A stretch of 63,604 bases of DNA, filler included, from Octopus bimaculoides (taxonomy: Eukaryota): NCBI RefSeq assembly GCF_001194135.2. It is 6 parts of 5 records of this genome, joined end to end, with 100 filler letters (N's around TTAATTAATTAA, not from the genome) between each part and the next. Parts side by side here need not be neighbours in the genome. Positions count along the whole stretch, not along the records: positions 55,465 to 61,416 come from NC_068986.1; 5 more parts are not named here. One strand, 5' to 3'. Below are positions 55,365 to 63,330 of the stretch, piece after piece. Numbering within the stretch: position 1 is the first letter of the stretch; each line of letters begins with the position of its first letter. The position numbers were made by a program, and so were the translations under genes. The notes beneath the pieces were generated by a model that was given only the letters and a program-made list of their open reading frames with translations, was not told the origin of the DNA and did no database searches.

Positions 55365-55465
55365 NNNNNNNNNNNNNNNNNNNNNNNNNNNNNNNNNNNN
55401 NNNNNNNNTTAATTAATTAANNNNNNNNNNNNNNNNNNNNNNNNNNNNNNNNNNNNNNNNNNNNT

Positions 55466-55830
55466 GGAAAAACTTTCAAAATACAAAGACCTGGAAATAG
55501 AGATAACTCGAATGTGGAATCTAAAAACAGAAACAATTCCTATCATAGTAGGTGCCTTAGGTATAATAAAAAAATATTCAGACAAATACATAACAAAAAC
55601 ACCAGGACTTACAAATATATATAACATACAGAAAATTGCACTACTGGGTACTGCACACATTCTACGCAAAACACTTTCAATACAGTAAACATAAGAGCAC
55701 CACAGCAAACCACAGCACATACCCAAGGCGCACAGAGCTGCGCTCGGTAGTGAAGTGAAAGCACGTTATAAAAATAAAACTACTGAATAATAATAATAAT
55801 AATAATATTAATAATAATAATAATTATAAA
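55466..55830 (+). mobile_element. 3' end of a REL LINE with a (TAA)n tail; 5' end cut by a gap
   Basis: Encodes KYKDLEIEITRMWNLKTETIPIIVGALGIIKKYSDKYITKTPGLTNIYNIQKIALLGTAHILRKTLSIQ*. The 3' UTR ends AAAACTACTGAA followed by (TAA)n. Confidence 0.88.
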
Positions 55831-55913
55831 TGAATAGTTTAATTGACTTACTAACTAAATTTAATGGCCACAATAATAACTATTATAGTATTGTATAGTT
55901 CAACAACGTCTTA

Positions 55914-57170
55914 TTACAACAATATTATTTTGTTACTTATAAAAGAATTAATAAAATTTAGATATATTCTATTTATAGTCTGTTGGTTGTGGCTGTATGT
56001 TCCTTGTGTTTTGCATAAATGGTTGCTGAGAGCCCGTTGTATCTCATGGCTTAGGTCGGCTTTCATATTTTCTAGATAAGTTAGTAAGAAAGATTTGCCT
56101 CTTTGATTTGCCATTTGGTCAGAGGGTACATGGTTCATGTTTATGTTATTTGGTGTTATGGTTTTCCCATAGTTCTGTCTTCGTTGTTTGGTTGTAGGAG
56201 GTGAAATGTGGTTGTGTTTTGTTTTTGTTGTCATAGGACTCCTCTGTTGCTGTTTATATTTATTTTTCGAACGTTTTCTGCCCTTCAGATGGTGGTGGTT
56301 ACATTCTGGGTTCAAGCACATTCTTAGTGACACAGAAGTTTGGCACAGTTTAGGATGGAAGAAGGTGCATCCATATATAGGATCAGGGCCATGGACTCTG
56401 TATTTAGCACAGTATTTGGGGTGGAGGTGAGGGCAGTTTTTTCCCGTTACGCCATATGGACAGGTGCCCTTAACAAGTCTACGGCATAAGGTAGGATGGG
56501 AAAAAGCACAGCGTCCATTGTTGGTGCCGCTGGGGTTAAATCTACAGTTACCTTGAGAATGGTAACGACAGGGTTTTTGACGTGGGCATATTAGAGGCTT
56601 TTCTGTACTGGCAGGCTCGTTGGTCAGTGGTCCTATTTTAGTAGCAATAGCAGACTGTTGTTGTTGCTGTAGCGGCAGTGAAATTTGATTTGCAACAGTA
56701 GGGCTGGATGGAATCAGGTCAGATAGTGGTGCCAAACAAGGTGCTTCCAATGTAGTAGCAGTAGCAAGCTGTTGTTGTTGTGGTAGTGAGTCCTGGCTTG
56801 CCACGGTAGTGTTGGGTGGAATTAGGTCAGAAAGCGATATCGATGAGGATGTTGTTTGTTGCTGGCTAGCGGGTCCATGAAATGACCCCTTACCTGTTGG
56901 AGTTGGGTCAGTGGGTGCACTACATCCATTGACAAGTATGGCTTCTAGTGTTGCCATGTGCGTGTGTAAAGTATGAAATGATCGTGTGATTTCTTTTATT
57001 TTGTTTTCGATCTGTTTTACAGATCTGCAAAAGGATTGTGGCGCTAATGTTTCAGCGATTTTACCGTAGACATTAGCATTTACACAGTCATTATGGTGAG
57101 TGTACCAAGCGTTTATCAGTGCACTGATTTCGTTTTCCACCCGGTGCCGTTTTAGAGTATTATTGGCCAT
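55914..57170 (-). CDS. Intronless 418-aa ORF: Myb/SANT-like (trihelix) domain, S/T/P/Q-rich linker, 4 CCCH-type zinc fingers, basic tail; resembles a stand-alone retroelement ORF1
   Basis: Uninterrupted ORF from the ATG at 57170. The N-terminus E.SALINAW...NANVYGKIAETL...SFCRSVKQIENKIKEITRSF (about 57152-56967) fits the Myb_DNA-bind_4 pattern. Fingers at 56570-56289 are CX7CX11CX3H, CX7CX8CX3H, CX13CX3H (degenerate) and CX8CX4CX3H, joined by HP linkers and ending HLKG. Confidence 0.8.
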   Translation of the reverse strand: MANNTLKRHRVENEISALINAWYTHHNDCVNANVYGKIAETLAPQSFCRSVKQIENKIKEITRSFHTLHTHMATLEAILVNGCSAPTDPTPTGKGSFHGPASQQQTTSSSISLSDLIPPNTTVASQDSLPQQQQLATATTLEAPCLAPLSDLIPSSPTVANQISLPLQQQQQSAIATKIGPLTNEPASTEKPLICPRQKPCRYHSQGNCRFNPSGTNNGRCAFSHPTLCRRLVKGTCPYGVTGKNCPHLHPKYCAKYRVHGPDPIYGCTFFHPKLCQTSVSLRMCLNPECNHHHLKGRKRSKNKYKQQQRSPMTTKTKHNHISPPTTKQRRQNYGKTITPNNINMNHVPSDQMANQRGKSFLLTYLENMKADLSHEIQRALSNHLCKTQGTYSHNQQTINRIYLNFINSFISNKIILL

Positions 57171-58047
57171 ATTCAGTGGCACAGTATTATACAGAATACG
57201 TTAGTTATTGGTGACTTGATGTAATAGGGAATGTACCGTTGTAAAGTTTGTGTCGATATATTCGGAAATGCGTGGGTGTGCGTGAGAGAGTTCAGTGTAT
57301 TTAGTACAAATCAGAATGAGCGGTGTGTTCAATACAAATCAAGAGAAAGGAATTGTACTCACGGCACTAATTTTAGAACTATTGTTTCTCCAGGTTTTAT
57401 ATAAATTTACGTAAATTTATCTTCCGATGATAGTAAAATAGTAGAATAGTAGAATTCAAGAGTTCTGGGACTAAAAATAAGGAAAGTTACTGCTGGTTTG
57501 AGTTGAAATCTGTTTCTTTGGTAACTGAGTGGCCGGAGCTATGAAAAGTACGTCTTGTTACGACGAACGAATGCTCGGATGTACATATATATATGTATGT
57601 GTGTGTGTATGTGTGTGTGTATGTGTGTGTGTATATAAGTTTATACACACACACATATATATGTACGTGTATATATACACATATATACATATATGTGTAT
57701 ATATACATATATGTGTATATATATACATTTATATATATATATATANNNNNNNNNNNNNNNNNNNNNNNNNNNNNNNNNNNNNNNNNNNNNNNNNNNNNNN
57801 NNNNNNNNNNNNNNNNNNNNNNNNNNNNNNNNNNNNNNNNNNNNNNNNNNNNNNNNNNNNNNNNNNNNNNNNNNNNNNNNNNNNNNNNNNNNNNNNNNNN
57901 NNNNNNNNNNNNNNNNNNNNNNNNNNNNNNNNNNNNNNNNNNNNNNNNNNNNNNNNNNNNNNNNNNNNNNNNNNNNNNNNNNNNNNNNNNNNNNNNNNNN
58001 NNNNNNNNNNNNNNNNNNNNNNNNNNNNNNNNNNNNNNNNNNNNNNN

Positions 58048-58071
<24 letters not shown>

Positions 58072-58078
<7 letters not shown>

Positions 58079-58500
58079 ACGTCATTTGGCGCCAAAATAC
58101 AGTCGCCATTACTGCGTTTTCATCCACGCATGCGCAGGGAATAGTTCCGGAAGGAACACAGCAAGAGTCCCATGCGCATGCGTGGAATTCAACATCTAAA
58201 CGTTCCCGCTCTTTTCATTCTCTTTTCTCGCCGGCCGGCGAAGAGGTAACACAGGTTCAACAGAGCTCTCTCACATGAGCATGGACGGGTCAAGCTGTCT
58301 CTCCAGCATCTCAACTCTGGGGACAGCTCATTCCAACATTCCAACGTCTCAGCGACCATGCCTATTTTCCTCCATGAATAAATACTTTTATGTTTCTGGT
58401 TTAGAGACTGCGTTATCCGTTCTTAAATTTTTCCTTAAAGTTTGATGTGAGGAATTAGTTATTTAACCTAAAGGTTGAATAAAGAAAGATATTTCTTACA
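58072..58500 (+). mobile_element. Solo LTR (429 bp), probably Gypsy-type, inserted in (TA)n
   Basis: Termini TGTA...TACA, TATA on both flanks, AATAAA at 58377 and 58478, and a GC-rich U3-like 5' part. Confidence 0.7.
58077..58185. promoter_or_regulatory. Cluster of palindromic transcription-factor-like motifs in the LTR
   Basis: TGACGTCA (58077, CRE), TTTGGCGCCAAA (58085, E2F-like), two NRF1-like GCGCATGCG sites inside an inverted repeat (58124-58140 and 58168-58185), and TTCCGGAA (58145, ETS-like) between them. Motif matches only. Confidence 0.45.
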
Positions 58501-58516
58501 TATATATATATATGTG

Positions 58517-58584
<68 letters not shown>

Positions 58585-58629
58585 GTTTGAACCAATTTTA
58601 GTTCTGGAGCTGCGGCCATACTAGGGCAC

Positions 58630-59245
58630 CACCATTGGCTTCACCTTCATTATTTGGTGGCATTTGGTGAATGAAGGAGTTTAATATTTTCTGCCGTGAG
58701 GTAGTGAGGTAGGCTCATCTGGAACTCTTGACAGAGGGAGATCTAGTGTTTTGAAGACACCTACATCCACATCATGCAGGTCTCTCGGGTATTTTGGAAA
58801 GATATTGAAGAGCAGAAGGCTCTTCAAACCCAAGCTGCTGCAATACCATGTTCTCTATTTTGATGGTGATATTGGGATCTTTAGCACTATGCAGTAGCGC
58901 CTCGTTGTGCTGCTTGTGTAACTTTCAATGCTAAAGTTTGGCAGAGGTCCTTCTAGAATGTTGCAGATGTATATCACTGTATATCTCTGCCGCCTTCATT
59001 TTGTGGAAAAAGTCTTAACTTTCAGCATTTCTCAGTAGTTCACACGTTGCATTGGGACAAATTTCTTTATGTAGCTTCGCTAGATTGCTTCAAGTTCCGC
59101 CGTTAATTTTATACTCTGTGAGGACCATATTCCGAAGTAATAGCGGTTGAGTTCATATGTCCTCCAAAGAAAACGATGGTTACTCATGTCAATGTCCAGG
59201 TCTTGCACTGATTTTGGTTAAGGGATTGCAGTTCCTCCTGGACTG
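58630..59245 (-). mobile_element. Degenerate 3' end of an APE-type LINE ORF2 (CR1/L2/Proto2/RTEX-like group)
   Basis: Encodes IWS....AELEAI*RS...NY*E.L...RRQRYTVIYICNILEG..PN...LLFNIFPKYPRDLHDVDVGVFKT.LD..LSRVPDEP...NSFIHQM, with many stops. Confidence 0.75.
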
Positions 59246-59255
59246 GTGTGTGTGT

Positions 59256-59309
<54 letters not shown>

Positions 59310-60644
59310 TTGTCCACCTACCATCACTTGAAAGCAACTGATGTATGCTTGTTTACGTTTCTGTAACATAGCAGTTTGTCAAAAGGAAACGATAGAAGAA
59401 GTACCAAACTTCTAAACAAGTTCTGTGTGCGATTTGTTCGACTAAGCCCTTGAAGGCCGTGTCCCTAAATGGCCTCACTTTAATGACTCACCAGGGAAAG
59501 GATAAAAGATATTCTGTTATACTTACTCAGACAGACAGACACACACACACGTATAATAGAAAATGAGAAAGGTTTATGCGACTTCAGCTGTTTACAGAAA
59601 CGTGTAGTTGTCCCATGTAGTAAATAGTTGCATTATTTGCAACGAGGAGTACACCTGCACCAGACCGTCACAATTTACTTGTCCTGGCCATAGACTGTGA
59701 TATGTACCAGTGGTAAGCATTAATTTGGTGATCTCGTCTGTTGATTATCGGTTCACATAATCTATTGACTCAGTCTTGTGTAGCTCTAAATAAAAACCAT
59801 GTTACACTCTATATTATAACAATAGTAGTATTTCTCTAGAGAACAATAGTTGTAGGTAACTTGTTGATCGACATGATGTTTGTATAAACTAGCCGTGTAT
59901 TAGTCTCTTCGTTTTTCGGTCTTGTTTGATTCTGTTGAATTCAATCATATTGTTGAATGCACATTATTTTGCTATATATAAAAATAGTTAGGAATAATTA
60001 GCAAAAATACAACAAAAATCAATCTCACTAACAAAAAAAAAAAAAGAATAACAAAAAAACAAACAAACAAACAAGCTTGGTGGAATCGATAATATATATT
60101 TCCTTTGCTTTGTCTTCGATATCAGTTCAATTTCTTTTTTACATTGTTTGTTTTATTTCATACCATTCTGCTTCAAGTAGTTGAATTGGAATCAATTTTG
60201 AAAGAAATGCTTGATAATTTCGCTGTCAATTTCAACAAATCGCTGAAGGCAATCTTTCAAATAAATGATGTTTTTTTTTTCAGGAATGTGGTCGTCTTCA
60301 TTAAAAGTGATTACGTTTAAAATTGTCTATTTTTTCTTCATATTATCATTTTCTTGATTTTTGTTTTTCATTCTTCGTCAAGTATGAGTGGTTTGTTTGG
60401 TGCTATTTTTTTAACATATTGCTTCAAGTTGAGATTTCTCCATTGTGTGACTTTTCTTGAGGTTTGTAGTCGTTCTTTTCTGTTATTTTATGAAATGTGT
60501 ATACTTAAAATAAATACATACGCATAAAAGTTAACCTACTAGTGTGTATAGATGTGCATGGGTTAGTGTATATATGTGTGCATAATGTACATATATACTC
60601 ACACAGTGTATATACATGTGTAGGAGTTTGTGTGTATGTATGCA

Positions 60645-60810
<166 letters not shown>

Positions 60811-60918
60811 CATACATACATACATACATACATGTCTTTCTGCCTGTCCCTCTATATAAACGTGTGCGATTTTAGTGCGTGTATGTATTCTGTGAGTGTT
60901 CATGTCAGTATGTGTGTG

Positions 60919-60959
<41 letters not shown>

Positions 60960-61210
60960 ATGAGCTACACATACAAGTCTACTACCTCAAATTACGGGCT
61001 GTGCCGCACCGGTCTAGTGATTTGACGGAAGCACAGATAGAGAAGTTAAGTTAGACTAGAACGAAACAAATAATACGTCTGTAGGAATTATTTTTAAATA
61101 AGCTAGAATATACAAGCTAGACTAGCTAGAAAAATAAAAAGAACAACTACAGAATGGAATAAAAAGCATAAAACATGAAAATTGTTCATCGACCTTCACA
61201 CAGTTTCTAA

Positions 61211-61249
<39 letters not shown>

Positions 61250-63111
61250 ATAGGGTGCGGTGCGGTGAATAAACTGTCGTCTAAATTATGCAAAAATGAA
61301 AATAACACTGACATCTCATTTTAACAGATATATTTACCAAAATTATATAAAAAATATATTGGAAAACTAAAGAGTAAATTTATTCAATGAAATTCCCATT
61401 GGCTTCAATCACGGCCNNNNNNNNNNNNNNNNNNNNNNNNNNNNNNNNNNNNNNNNNNNNTTAATTAATTAANNNNNNNNNNNNNNNNNNNNNNNNNNNN
61501 NNNNNNNNNNNNNNNNTATATATATATATATATATATATATTTGTGTGTGTCTGTGTTTATCCCTCCACTGTTGGTTGACAACCGATGTCGGTGTGTTTA
61601 CGTCCCCGTAACTTAGCAGTTTGTCTTAAGCGACCGATAGAATAAATACCAGGCTTACAAAGAATAAAAAATATAGATATAAATATGTGTATGTGTGTGT
61701 GTATATATACACACACACACATATGTAGATTGTGTGTGTGTATATATATATATATATACACACACACATATACAGGATTTGGAGGTTGGGATTTTTGTTC
61801 GTAATATTATGAGACGAAACAAAACGAGAACGGAAGTTTTAATAAGTTTTAATGCGAAAAAAGAAACGTTACGAAAAATTATAAAAAAAACCATATTGAA
61901 CGTTTTAGAAGGAAAAAAAACTAAACGATACATTTTTTATGGCGAAAATTCAAAAACGAAAGGAGTTTGTCAAAATACGATTTTCATATCTCCCGCGCTA
62001 TACAAGCAGACAATATATTGGCTTGTTACTATGGAAATAGGCACCAGTATTAATTATTATGCCTTTCGATTGGCTAAAATTACCCGAAATTTGCTAACTT
62101 TGAAATTTATTAACTTCTTATTTAACAATTTATGGCGAAAATGAATTTCATTACCATAATTAGCATACAAAATTATAACACTATACCAAATTTGAAAACA
62201 AAACAAAAAATAGAATTGAAAACTGAGTAAAACAGAAAAGATTCAAAATCTTTTATGGAAATTGCCGAACAATTAGATAAACAGAGCAATTCTCAATTTC
62301 ACTTTCGTGATACCATCTCCGAAGAAATGCCTAAACCTCTCCATTGGAATACACAAAAATGTTATTTACGAAATAAAAACAGATTGCCATAACTACACAT
62401 TGATGCCATAATTCTGACGCTGTTTCCGCATAACTGTCTGAAAACAGCATATTTTTCTGTAAAATAAGTTTTCGAGGGAGTCGGTTACGATTATATCCAT
62501 AACATTTAAAAAATGGTTAAGGAGTTTCGGCTCATTTTCCTCATAATTTTTTCTAAAACGTCATATTTTTAAATAGTATACGGCAGAAATGCGTTTCCGA
62601 AATTATAGATAACAATTATTCTGACAAAATTTAGAAAAGTAATTTCTCTCTTTAGCGAAATTTCGGATCACCTTTCTTTACTCCCACCCTAACTCTCTTA
62701 TTAATTTCCGAATCTTTAACGTTTTCNNNNNNNNNNNNNNNNNNNNNNNNNNNNNNNNNNNNNNNNNNNNNNNNNNNNNNNNNNNNNNNNNNNNNNNNNN
62801 NNNNNNNNNNNNNNNNNNNNNNNNNNNNNNNNNNNNNNNNNNNNNNNNNNNNNNNNNNNNNNNNNNNNNNNNNNNNNNNNNNNNNNNNNNNNNNNNNNNN
62901 NNNNNNNNNNNNNNNNNNNNNNNNNNNNNNNNNNNNNNNNNNNNNNNNNNNNNNNNNNNNNNNNNNNNNNNNNNNNNNNNNNNNNNNNNNNNNNNNNNNN
63001 NNNNNNNNNNNNNNNNNNNNNNNNNNNNNNNNNNNNNNNNNNNNNNNNNNNNNNNNNNNNNNNNNNNNNNNNNNNNNNNNNNNNNNNNNNNNNNNNNNNN
63101 NNNNNNNNNNN

Positions 63112-63330
63112 ATTTGAGAGACATGCAAGACATGGATGCGGAGGTCTTCAAGACAAAACTTGACGCTTTCCTCTCCACGATACCAGACGAACCAATGGCT
63201 CGTAATGAGACGCAGTTTAGGGCAGCTATGTCAAGTTCTCTTATACACCAGATGTGCCATCAAAACTCTTGATTGGACCATATCAGGTGGAGGAGAAGAG
63301 CCATGCAAGGAACGTGAAGAGAGCACAGCA
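63112..63330 (+). mobile_element. 3' end of the same APE-type LINE family; 5' end cut by a gap
   Basis: Encodes LRDMQDMDAEVFKTKLDAFLSTIPDEPMARNETQFRAAMSSSLIHQMCHQNS*. Confidence 0.75.

What the first reader, a model, noticed from the sequence alone, without database searches (positions are those of the whole stretch)
55914..57170. Intact stand-alone ORF fusing a Myb/SANT trihelix domain to a CCCH zinc-finger array
Seen: a 418-codon intronless ORF with no stop or frameshift, while every recognisable element ORF around it is decayed or truncated. It has a trihelix-like N-terminus, an S/T/P/Q linker and four HP-linked CCCH fingers. An AT-rich UTR-like stretch with ATTAAA follows the stop, and no APE/RT ORF2 is visible downstream. 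Known: Myb/SANT-like domains occur in Harbinger accessory proteins and MSANTD genes, and CCCH fingers usually bind RNA. Inference: the finger array and the FL..LE.MK-type tail resemble ORF1 of some invertebrate APE-type LINEs, and ORF2 relics of such a LINE lie at 58630-59245 and 63112-63330. The ORF could be (a) a LINE ORF1 that carries or captured a DNA-binding domain, (b) an ORF1-only non-autonomous element, or (c) a domesticated DNA- and RNA-binding regulator. I do not recall this architecture being described.
Basis: partly seen in the sequence, partly recalled or inferred. Interest (0 to 1): 0.78.

Follow-up and report, generated by a model that had tools for sequence, protein, structure and literature searches.

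The report
Dead LINE copy with Myb-type ORF1
The open reading frame is real, but it is a decaying, cut-off copy of a jumping gene (a LINE retrotransposon) present in tens of copies, not a host gene; the notable point is that this LINE family's first protein carries a Myb/SANT-like DNA-binding domain where its relatives carry a PHD finger.

Summary
The 418-codon ORF exists on the minus strand (57170 to 55914). Its N-terminus is a Myb/SANT-like domain: Pfam PF13837 gives 30 bits for the N-terminus alone and 42.6 bits (E 8e-11) for the family consensus. Its C-terminal half (aa ~185-397) is the zinc-finger array and helix of a large LINE ORF1 family, with 1053 relatives. On at least seven independent contigs such an ORF1 sits directly upstream of an ORF2 with an endonuclease domain, and with reverse transcriptase where the contig is long enough. 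Most relatives carry a PHD finger in place of the Myb domain.

The whole ORF, Myb part and 5' leader included, is a repeat of a few tens of copies at 90% identity or more, in at least five organisms. This copy looks dead. Against the family consensus dN/dS is about 0.9. It has lost the first Myb tryptophan and a near-invariant Thr. An 18-nt in-frame deletion removes a cysteine of finger 3. Homology stops at 55981; the last 21 codons, the stop and the "UTR" belong to another retroelement on the opposite strand. No RNA-seq read matched at 99% or more.

Verdict: an ordinary truncated LINE copy. The family-level Myb-for-PHD swap appears undescribed and is modestly interesting.

The parts
55914..57170 (-). 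418-codon ORF plus stop. It is a 3'-interrupted copy of a LINE ORF1 (aa 1-397) read through into 21 unrelated codons.
56958..57149 (-). Myb/SANT-like (trihelix-type, PF13837) domain, aa 8-71. This copy has R10 where the family consensus has the canonical first Trp.
56589..56927 (-). Disordered S/T/P/Q-rich linker, aa 82-194, with a 38-aa (114-nt) tandem duplication (SDLIP...QQQQ; 56616-56843).
   Evidence: the SDLIP motif is also upstream of P0001 in L002
56496..56570 (-). Finger 1, C-x7-C-x11-C-x3-H (aa 201-225). Present in the closest relatives only.
56421..56486 (-). Finger 2, C-x7-C-x8-C-x3-H (aa 229-250). Ligands are near-invariant in the family.
56355..56411 (-). Finger 3, broken. An 18-nt in-frame deletion (family: GC-TKGxxC-xFFHP) removed one Cys ligand (aa 254-272).
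56289..56345 (-). Finger 4, C-x8-C-x4-C-x3-H (aa 276-294), followed by KG(T>R)xR. The near-invariant Thr298 is lost.
56115..56288 (-). Basic, low-complexity spacer (aa 295-352).
56001..56099 (-). Conserved amphipathic C-terminal helix FLLTYLENMKADLS... (aa 358-390), a likely oligomerisation helix.
   Evidence: (pLDDT about 91-93)
55981..55982 (.). End of homology to the LINE family. Other copies go on here with ...LENHTHTAPY... (the true ORF1 tail). The window switches to another repeat.
55917..55979 (-). 21 non-homologous, AT-rich codons (TINRIYLNFINSFISNKIILL) supplied by the neighbouring repeat.
55467..55980 (+). 3' end of a different retroelement on the opposite strand. It has an open 73-codon ORF tail (55467-55685, EKLSKYKDLEIEITRMWNLK...LLGTAHILRKTLSIQ*), then a 3' UTR with (AAT)14 at 55786-55829. 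Its copies elsewhere continue CTTTAT plus an A-rich tail beyond 55980.
57171..57470 (-). 5' leader of the same repeat family. Depth is lower, and some copies lack about 57176-57273.

Best explanation
The ORF is one old, inactive copy of an APE-type LINE of the CR1/L2 (Jockey-superfamily) kind.

The family's ORF1 protein is built as follows:
- an N-terminal Myb/SANT-like domain;
- a disordered linker;
- an array of four CCCH-type zinc fingers;
- a basic spacer;
- an amphipathic C-terminal helix.

Most relatives have a PHD finger in the N-terminal position, so this lineage swapped a chromatin-reader module for a DNA-binding-type module.

Inferred mechanism for active family members:
- the finger array and basic spacer bind and coat the element's RNA;
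- the C-terminal helix multimerises the protein;
- the Myb/SANT-like domain tethers the RNP to DNA or chromatin, in the role proposed for PHD;
- ORF2 (APE + RT), whose start overlaps the ORF1 stop in the closest relatives, does target-primed reverse transcription.

This particular copy does nothing. It has drifted neutrally, lost key residues and one zinc ligand, and its ORF1 is cut at nt 55981. There it abuts the 3' end of another retroelement in convergent orientation. The cause is most simply a nested insertion or a deletion. The frame merely runs on for 21 codons to a chance stop.

Shown: homology, ORF1-ORF2 linkage in relatives, multi-copy status, drift, truncation, lack of matching RNA.
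Inferred: the biochemical roles of the domains, the CR1/L2 assignment, and the cause of the junction.
For: LINE ORF1 identity:
- phmmer against 1.84 billion representative proteins gave 1053 hits, all to aa ~185-400.
- The closest, P0001 (57% identity by BLASTP, 63% by phmmer), ends 12 nt inside an overlapping ORF2 that begins with an APE N-terminus.
- P0003 is followed by Exo_endo_phos.
- P0012 is followed on 4 contigs by a large ORF2, which has recorded APE Pfam hits on 2 of them (APE+RVT_1 on L007, APE on L009); the ORF2 was not looked up on L008 and L010.
- L006 shows the same layout.

PHD in relatives:
- The consensus of alignment A1 has CxxC..CxxC..HxxC..CxxC.
- The A1 profile hits PHD structures (KAT6A, E 1e-5) and the RBM22 CCCH finger (E 6e-5).

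Myb domain: PF13837 scores 30 bits on this copy's N-terminus and 42.6 bits on the family consensus.

Family-wide fusion:
- DNA depth is about 10-25 over the whole ORF, against about 0.2-0.8 for single-copy sequence in the same runs.
- Contigs in other organisms span linker, Myb domain and 5' leader.
- An RNA-run contig of 888 nt spans fingers, linker and Myb from another copy with finger 3 intact.

Decay: 32 non-synonymous against 10 synonymous changes from the consensus (dN/dS about 0.92), including W10R, T298R and the 18-nt deletion.

Truncation: all relatives stop aligning at aa 397, and family contigs read on with the true tail.

Expression: 0 of 159 laid RNA reads matched at 99% or more.

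Finger array fold: pLDDT above 90, and the best (non-significant) fold matches are tandem CCCH fingers.
Against: - No full-length element with Myb-ORF1 plus ORF2 from the window's own organism could be read. The ORF1-ORF2 link comes from relatives at 40-63% protein identity on contigs of unknown hosts.
- The junction at 55981 is not confirmed by any independent read or contig. Sampled coverage was under 1x, so it could be an assembly misjoin.
- Pfam gives no zf-CCCH hit at threshold for this copy or its relatives, and Foldseek matches are not significant.
- The N-terminal structure model is of low confidence. Its long third helix also resembles GCN4-type coiled coils.
- The CR1/L2 assignment rests on literature (PHD-type ORF1s occur only there, PMC4120745) and on my reading of RT motifs, not on a phylogeny.
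- All indels seen against the family are in frame. This is what selection would give, though most lie in CAA/TTG-type runs.
Confidence: 0.8

Rival explanations
1. Domesticated host gene. A LINE ORF1 fused to a Myb domain has been co-opted as a DNA- and RNA-binding regulator, and this locus is the functional gene.
For: A 418-codon frame without stops or frameshifts. All indels relative to the family are in frame.
Against: - A few tens of copies at 90% identity or more, Myb part included.
- dN/dS is about 0.92 against the consensus, with loss of the Myb Trp, of a near-invariant Thr and of a zinc ligand.
- The C-terminus and stop come from another repeat.
- No RNA read matched at 99% or more in three samples of about 1.7-1.9 Gb each.
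- P(no stop by chance) is about 0.1.
Confidence: 0.03
2. ORF1-only non-autonomous retroelement. The truncated form with its AT-rich 3' end is itself a mobile unit, copied in trans by an autonomous LINE.
For: The sequence beyond the stop is AT-rich, has (AAT)n and ATTAAA, and no ORF2 is seen in the 449 nt available.
Against: - Family copies in five organisms continue past 55982 into the normal ORF1 tail.
- Contigs carrying the left-hand repeat continue past 55980 into unrelated A-rich sequence, so the two halves are separate repeats.
- No read or contig carries the junction.
- The left-hand sequence encodes the tail of another retroelement ORF on the opposite strand.
Confidence: 0.04
3. Assembly artefact at the 3' end. 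The join at 55980/55981 between two repeat families is a misassembly, and the real locus carries a longer (possibly full) LINE copy.
For: - No read or contig at 96% or more covers 55984-56001 in eight runs.
- A 171-173-nt contig identical to 55909/55911-55980 then diverges.
- An N gap lies about 600 nt upstream of the ATG (57746-58047).
Against: Sampled single-copy coverage was only about 0.2-0.8x per raw run. Logan contigs of roughly 1x runs rarely hold unique joins, so absence is expected. The diverging contigs have multi-copy depth and so are other copies of the repeat.
Confidence: 0.12
4. The N-terminal domain is a coiled coil, as in L1-type ORF1 proteins, and not a Myb/SANT DNA-binding domain.
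For: PDB sequence hits of aa 31-81 to GCN4-type coiled coils (E 0.003-0.05). AlphaFold draws one long helix over aa 44-80.
Against: - PF13837 matches profile positions 2-72 of 89 at 42.6 bits for the consensus, including the W-x3-E-x3-L start and the RS..Q...K signature of helix 3.
- The GCN4 similarity covers only the last helix.
- The single-sequence model has three helices in the expected order.
Confidence: 0.1

Closest known systems
Type III (PHD-containing) ORF1 of CR1/L2-lineage LINEs (Kapitonov & Jurka 2003; Khazina & Weichenrieder 2009; Metcalfe & Casane 2014, PMC4120745)
   Same: - The Cys/His finger array, basic spacer and FLxxLxxxK helix are homologous (E down to 1e-62).
- ORF1 lies directly upstream of, or overlapping, an APE/RT ORF2 in relatives.
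- The family is dispersed and multi-copy.
- ORF1 is modular with an exchangeable N-terminal domain.
   Different: - The N-terminal PHD finger is replaced by a Myb/SANT-like (PF13837) domain.
- There is an extra first finger and a duplicated Q/S/T/P linker.
- The published ORF1 domain catalogue for this superfamily lists PHD, RRM, CCHC, esterase, coiled coil, CTD and zf/lz. The words Myb, SANT and CCCH do not occur in that paper.
Myb domains of site-specific non-LTR elements (R2 N-terminal ZF+Myb; TRAS Myb-like region) - from my own knowledge, not tested here
   Same: A Myb-type helix-turn-helix module carried by a non-LTR retrotransposon protein, thought or shown to bind target DNA.
   Different: In those elements the Myb motif is in the RT-bearing protein (the single ORF of R2, or ORF2 of TRAS), and they are canonical Myb repeats. 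Here the domain is of the Myb_DNA-bind_4/trihelix-MADF kind and sits in ORF1. No target-site specificity has been shown.
Myb/SANT-like accessory proteins of PIF/Harbinger transposons and the derived MSANTD/HARBI1-partner genes
   Same: The same Pfam superfamily of Myb/SANT-like domain, associated with a mobile element.
   Different: Those are DNA-transposon proteins that pair with a DDE transposase and have no CCCH array. Here the rest of the protein is a LINE ORF1, and no transposase or TIRs are nearby.
Tandem CCCH RNA-binding zinc fingers (CPSF30, TIS11d, ZAP, MBNL, RBM22, Nab2)
   Same: C-x7-8-C-x4-11-C-x3-H spacing. The family profile hits RBM22's CCCH finger (E 6e-5). The best fold matches are CPSF30 and TIS11d. 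The expected role is binding single-stranded RNA.
   Different: No Pfam CCCH model reaches threshold. The spacings are atypical (x11 and x14 loops), the HP(K) linkers are family-specific, and Foldseek E-values are 0.17 or worse.

Membership tests
APE-type LINE ORF1 (CR1/L2-lineage, PHD type III relatives) | Significant sequence homology to ORF1 proteins of the family | tested here: met
   1053 hits at E<=1e-3 and 92 at E<=1e-10, all over aa ~185-400. Near-invariant Cys/His/Gly/Pro columns are shared.
APE-type LINE ORF1 (CR1/L2-lineage, PHD type III relatives) | ORF1 is followed on the same strand by an ORF2 encoding APE endonuclease and reverse transcriptase | tested here: inconclusive
   Met for relatives: L001, L002, L006 and L007-L010. 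Not seen at this locus: ORF1 is cut at 55981 and only 449 nt remain before the piece's edge.
APE-type LINE ORF1 (CR1/L2-lineage, PHD type III relatives) | Dispersed, multi-copy, with copies diverging from a consensus | tested here: met
   Depth is about 10-25 against about 0.2-0.8 for single-copy sequence. Most reads are 90-95% alike. The same consensus is found in five organisms.
APE-type LINE ORF1 (CR1/L2-lineage, PHD type III relatives) | N-terminal PHD finger | tested here: not met
   There is no Cys4-His-Cys3 pattern in aa 1-190. Pfam finds Myb_DNA-bind_4 instead. Relatives have PHD.
APE-type LINE ORF1 (CR1/L2-lineage, PHD type III relatives) | RT phylogeny places the element's ORF2 in the CR1 or L2 clade | not testable with these tools
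   No ORF2 is available for this family in this organism, and no reference RT set was at hand. The RT motifs of relative L007 (HGFRKGRNC, YLDYSKAFD, FADD) look CR1-like to me, from memory only.
Myb/SANT-like DNA-binding domain, Pfam PF13837 (Myb_DNA-bind_4) | Profile score at or above the gathering threshold (27 bits) | tested here: met
   25.6 bits on the whole protein (below threshold), 30.0 bits on aa 1-90 alone, and 42.6 bits (E 8e-11) on the family consensus of aa 1-90.
Myb/SANT-like DNA-binding domain, Pfam PF13837 (Myb_DNA-bind_4) | Three-helix bundle fold with conserved aromatic core | tested here: inconclusive
   The single-sequence AlphaFold model has three helices (2-31, 34-41, 44-80), but pLDDT is 71 and pTM 0.37, and there are no Foldseek matches. 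The consensus restores the first Trp, W10.
Myb/SANT-like DNA-binding domain, Pfam PF13837 (Myb_DNA-bind_4) | Binds DNA | not testable with these tools
   Needs EMSA, SELEX or ChIP.
CCCH-type zinc finger (Pfam zf-CCCH clan) | Cys3His ligand pattern with C-x(4-15)-C-x(4-6)-C-x3-H-like spacing | tested here: inconclusive
   The spacings read directly are C-x7-C-x11-C-x3-H, C-x7-C-x8-C-x3-H and C-x8-C-x4-C-x3-H. Only the last has a canonical middle loop. The other finger is broken to C-x13-C-x3-H.
CCCH-type zinc finger (Pfam zf-CCCH clan) | Profile or structural match to known CCCH fingers | tested here: inconclusive
   No Pfam hit for this copy, and only sub-threshold hits in relatives. The family profile hits RBM22 at E 6e-5. 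Foldseek's top six matches are CCCH proteins, but E is 0.17 or worse.
Domesticated transposon-derived host gene | Single-copy locus, purifying selection, locus-specific expression | tested here: not met
   Multi-copy, dN/dS about 0.92 with loss of conserved residues, and 0 RNA reads at 99% or more. Synteny across species could not be tested.
PIF/Harbinger Myb-like accessory gene | Lies within a TIR-bounded element beside a DDE transposase gene | tested here: not met
   There is no transposase ORF and no terminal inverted repeats in the piece. The C-terminal half is LINE ORF1.

The most novel reading that the evidence does not exclude
The family, not this copy, represents a previously undescribed LINE ORF1 type. 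In it a trihelix/MADF-like Myb/SANT DNA-binding domain has replaced the PHD chromatin reader. This would give an APE-type LINE an ORF1-borne DNA-recognition module that steers where the RNP docks and integrates. The family is kept with one shared consensus in at least five related organisms and is still transcribed.
Probability: 0.3. Interest if true: 0.6.

Novelty: new variant of a known kind. Interest (0 to 1): 0.35.

Why it matters
For annotation, this locus should be masked as a LINE fragment and not called as a gene. The tidy 418-codon ORF is a chance survivor whose end is borrowed from a neighbouring repeat.

For transposon biology, the family adds a clear case to the picture of ORF1 as a modular, shuffling protein in CR1/L2-type LINEs. 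The same finger array and helix are found with either a PHD finger or a Myb/SANT-like domain at the N-terminus. That supports the idea that the N-terminal module is an exchangeable chromatin- or DNA-docking device. It also offers a natural pair of constructs to test what that module does in retrotransposition, such as insertion-site choice, nuclear retention or RNP assembly.

The finger array itself is conserved in over a thousand relatives, folds confidently, and is not captured by Pfam. It deserves a family definition.

Tried and rejected
Shorter stretches were used instead.
- Exact-protein look-up of the 418-aa product found nothing on record.
- Homologue searches with the N-terminal 194 aa and with the 90-aa consensus Myb domain found nothing. 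The origin of the Myb module is therefore untraced.
- A PDB sequence search with the N-terminus gave only GCN4-type coiled-coil noise.
- Foldseek on the N-terminal model gave no match.
- Foldseek on the full model gave only non-significant CCCH hits.
- Cluster look-up of ten relatives gave no names or hosts.
- The claimed ORF2 relic at 58630-59245 has no Pfam hit in six frames and no tblastx similarity to related ORF2s.
- The tRNA and Rfam scans of the piece were empty.
- The junction at 55981 was tested in eight runs without a spanning read. This is uninformative because coverage was under 1x.
- Literature searches for Myb/SANT or CCCH in LINE ORF1 found no description. This is not proof of absence, because Repbase and Dfam could not be consulted.

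Readings considered and rejected:
- A Harbinger accessory gene: there is no transposase or TIRs, and the C-terminal half is LINE ORF1.
- A processed retrogene with a poly(A) signal: the 3' sequence belongs to another retroelement on the other strand.
Full report
**1. The observation**

The piece (55465-61416) holds a minus-strand ORF from the ATG at 57170 to the stop at 55916-55914. It is 418 codons long with no internal stop.

Pfam finds one family on the whole protein: Myb_DNA-bind_4 (PF13837), aa 12-71, E 1.6e-5, 25.6 bits against a cut-off of 27. Scanned alone, the first 90 residues reach 30.0 bits.

Behind the Myb region lie:
- an S/T/P/Q-rich linker containing a 114-nt tandem duplication;
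- four Cys/His units separated by HP(K/T);
- a basic spacer;
- the helix FLLTYLENMKADLS....

Two ATTAAA motifs follow the stop.

**2. The C-terminal half is a LINE ORF1**

An exhaustive phmmer search of 1.84 billion representative proteins gave 1053 hits at E<=1e-3. Every one of the 150 listed aligns to aa ~185-400. The contigs behind these proteins show the context:
- P0003 is followed by an ORF with Exo_endo_phos domains.
- The closest relative, P0001 (57% identity by BLASTP, 63% by phmmer), ends at nt 883 of its contig, while an ORF starting at 871 encodes an APE N-terminus.
- L006 has the same arrangement.
- P0012 is followed on four independent contigs by a large ORF2. APE Pfam hits are recorded on two of them (with RVT_1 on the longest contig, L007); the other two ORF2s were not looked up.

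An alignment of 150 relatives (A1) has this consensus: helical region, CxxC..CxxC..HxxC..CxxC, three Cys3His units, KGTxR, FLxxLxxxK. A profile of A1 hits solved PHD fingers (KAT6A, E 1e-5) and the CCCH finger of RBM22 (E 6e-5).

PHD-bearing ORF1s are known only from the CR1 and L2 lineages of the Jockey superfamily (Metcalfe & Casane 2014, PMC4120745). So the relatives are type III-like ORF1s, and the window's protein is the same thing with a different N-terminus.

AlphaFold with A1 models aa ~225-300 and the helix 361-385 at pLDDT above 90, and the linker below 50. The top Foldseek matches are all tandem CCCH RNA-binding fingers (CPSF30, TIS11d, ZAP, MBNL2), but none is significant. No Pfam CCCH model reaches threshold on this copy or on ten relatives. 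'CCCH-type' is therefore a well-founded description, not a demonstrated membership.

**3. The Myb part belongs to the element, not to the locus**

Raw genomic reads of the same organism cover the whole ORF at a summed depth of about 10-25 at 90% identity or more, from 55982 to 57170. Depth is about 4-8 over the leader up to 57480. Most reads are 90-95% alike and few are 99% or more. Apparently unique sequence in the same piece is covered only about 0.2-0.8x in the same samples. The ORF is thus a repeat of a few tens of copies.

Contigs of four other organisms show the same picture and the same consensus letters where the window differs. Individual contigs run from the linker through the Myb region into the leader, for example 56820-57223 and 56936-57201. 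A contig of an RNA-labelled run (888 nt) covers 56225-57085 at about 93% identity and carries the 18 nt that this copy lacks. A different copy is therefore transcribed with fingers, linker and Myb domain in one piece.

I replaced 12 window letters in 56953-57157 by the majority letter of the family. This changes T5I, R10W, N31K, T41K, P44S, C48Y and A73V. The resulting 90-aa consensus scores 42.6 bits, E 8e-11, on PF13837, with the canonical first tryptophan restored. The Myb/SANT call is thus supported, and better for the family than for this copy. That is what one expects if the domain was functional in the active elements.

One caveat remains. The long last helix also resembles GCN4-type coiled coils, and the structure models of the N-terminus are of low confidence.

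**4. This copy is decayed and cut**

Forty-two well-supported consensus-to-window differences split into 32 non-synonymous and 10 synonymous. Sites split 974 to 280, which gives dN/dS of about 0.92. The losses include:
- the first Myb tryptophan;
- Thr298, conserved in at least 90% of relatives;
- a near-invariant cysteine of finger 3, removed by an 18-nt in-frame deletion that is absent from all relatives and from other copies.

Since 4.3% of random substitutions create stops, 42-60 substitutions leave no stop with P of about 0.07-0.17. The open frame needs no selection to explain it.

All relatives stop aligning at aa 397 (nt 55981/55982). Family contigs in three other organisms read on there with TAGAAAATCATACACACACAGCTCCATACA on the coding strand. 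This encodes ..LENHTHTAPY.., matching the true tail ..TAPYESHAQCCL* of P0038, after which ORF2 starts.

In the window the frame instead enters AT-rich sequence for 21 codons. That sequence is a separate repeat. Contigs identical to 55909/55911-55980 continue with CTTTAT plus A-rich, variable sequence. On the plus strand it carries an open 73-codon ORF tail (55467-55685, EKLSKYKDLEIEITRMWNLK...LLGTAHILRKTLSIQ*), followed by a 3' UTR with (AAT)14. Two retroelements therefore meet tail-to-body in convergent orientation.

A nested insertion of the second element into ORF1, or a deletion, explains this. In the first case the rest of ORF1 and ORF2 would lie beyond the piece's left edge.

No read or contig at 96% or more spans 55984-56001 in eight runs. 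With coverage under 1x this neither confirms nor refutes the join, so a misassembly remains possible.

**5. Expression**

Three raw RNA-seq runs were sampled at about 1.7-1.9 Gb each. They gave 82, 48 and 29 reads at 90% identity or more. None was at 99% or more, and nearly all were only partly on the sequence. The family is transcribed at a low level. This copy shows no sign of it.

**6. Other claims**

The 'ORF2 relic' at 58630-59245 has no Pfam hit in six frames and no tblastx similarity to the ORF2s of L001, L002 or L006. No tRNA or Rfam family is present in the piece.

**7. How it most likely works (family level; inferred)**

By analogy with other ORF1 proteins:
- The finger array and basic spacer bind the element's RNA.
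- The conserved amphipathic helix multimerises. It has a weak resemblance to tetramerisation helices.
- The N-terminal module docks the RNP on chromatin. This is the role proposed for PHD in PMC4120745.

Here that module is a Myb/SANT-like domain, which would recognise DNA or histone tails instead of methyl-lysine marks. ORF2, which overlaps the ORF1 stop in the closest relatives, carries out target-primed reverse transcription. None of these activities was tested.

**8. Comparison and novelty**

Myb motifs are known in non-LTR elements, but in the RT-bearing protein of site-specific elements (R2, TRAS; my own knowledge). Myb/SANT-like proteins of the PF13837 kind are known from Harbinger DNA transposons.

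The published catalogue of ORF1 domains in the Jockey superfamily does not use the words Myb, SANT or CCCH. Full-text searches found no paper combining Myb/SANT, ORF1 and non-LTR retrotransposons. No protein among about 15 billion carries both halves, although cephalopod-like or other host proteomes are poorly represented there. Repbase and Dfam could not be checked.

I therefore rate the family's ORF1 as a new variant of a known kind. The locus itself is ordinary.

**9. Verdict**

The locus is an ordinary dead LINE fragment. Interest is 0.35, carried by the PHD-to-Myb module swap and by the large, unannotated CCCH-type ORF1 family.

Noticed in passing
window 55467-55688 (+): An open 73-codon frame runs in from the piece's left edge and ends in a stop: EKLSKYKDLEIEITRMWNLKTETIPIIVGALGIIKKYSDKYITKTPGLTNIYNIQKIALLGTAHILRKTLSIQ*. 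It looks like the conserved C-terminal tail of another retroelement's ORF. It has no Pfam hit. Its 3' UTR runs to about 55980 and contains (AAT)14.
   Followed up: partly
window 57382-57542: Short segments here have very high depth in an RNA-labelled run (60-nt contigs at about 5000x), and raw RNA reads reach a depth of about 30. In other copies the segment borders (CTAT)n/(CT)n microsatellites at 57542. It is a separate, abundant, transcribed repeat just upstream of the LINE leader.
   Followed up: no
window 57746-58047: An assembly gap of 302 N, flanked by (TG)n/(TA)n microsatellites, lies about 600 nt upstream of the ORF's ATG.
   Followed up: no
window 56616-56843 (-): A 38-aa (114-nt) tandem duplication inside the ORF1 linker (..SDLIP..QQQQ.. 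twice, 78% identity over the 46-nt repeat core). The SDLIP motif also occurs upstream of the ORF1 remnant in the distant relative L002.
   Followed up: partly
window 59424-59467 and 59512-59555: Two short islands are covered about 15-20x by genomic reads at 90-95% identity, while their surroundings are at single-copy depth. They are fragments of other repeats, the second next to a (CA)n tract.
   Followed up: no
What it is remains unknown.
   Followed up: partly
window 60645-60810: A long (TATC)42 microsatellite.
   Followed up: no
loci L001-L010 and alignment A1: The ORF1 family (PHD plus three Cys3His units plus the FLxxLxxxK helix) has more than 1000 members in public data, all unnamed. Most lie on ENA metagenome or Logan contigs of unknown hosts. 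The finger array folds at pLDDT above 90 yet matches no Pfam model at threshold, so it is a candidate for a new family definition.
   Followed up: partly
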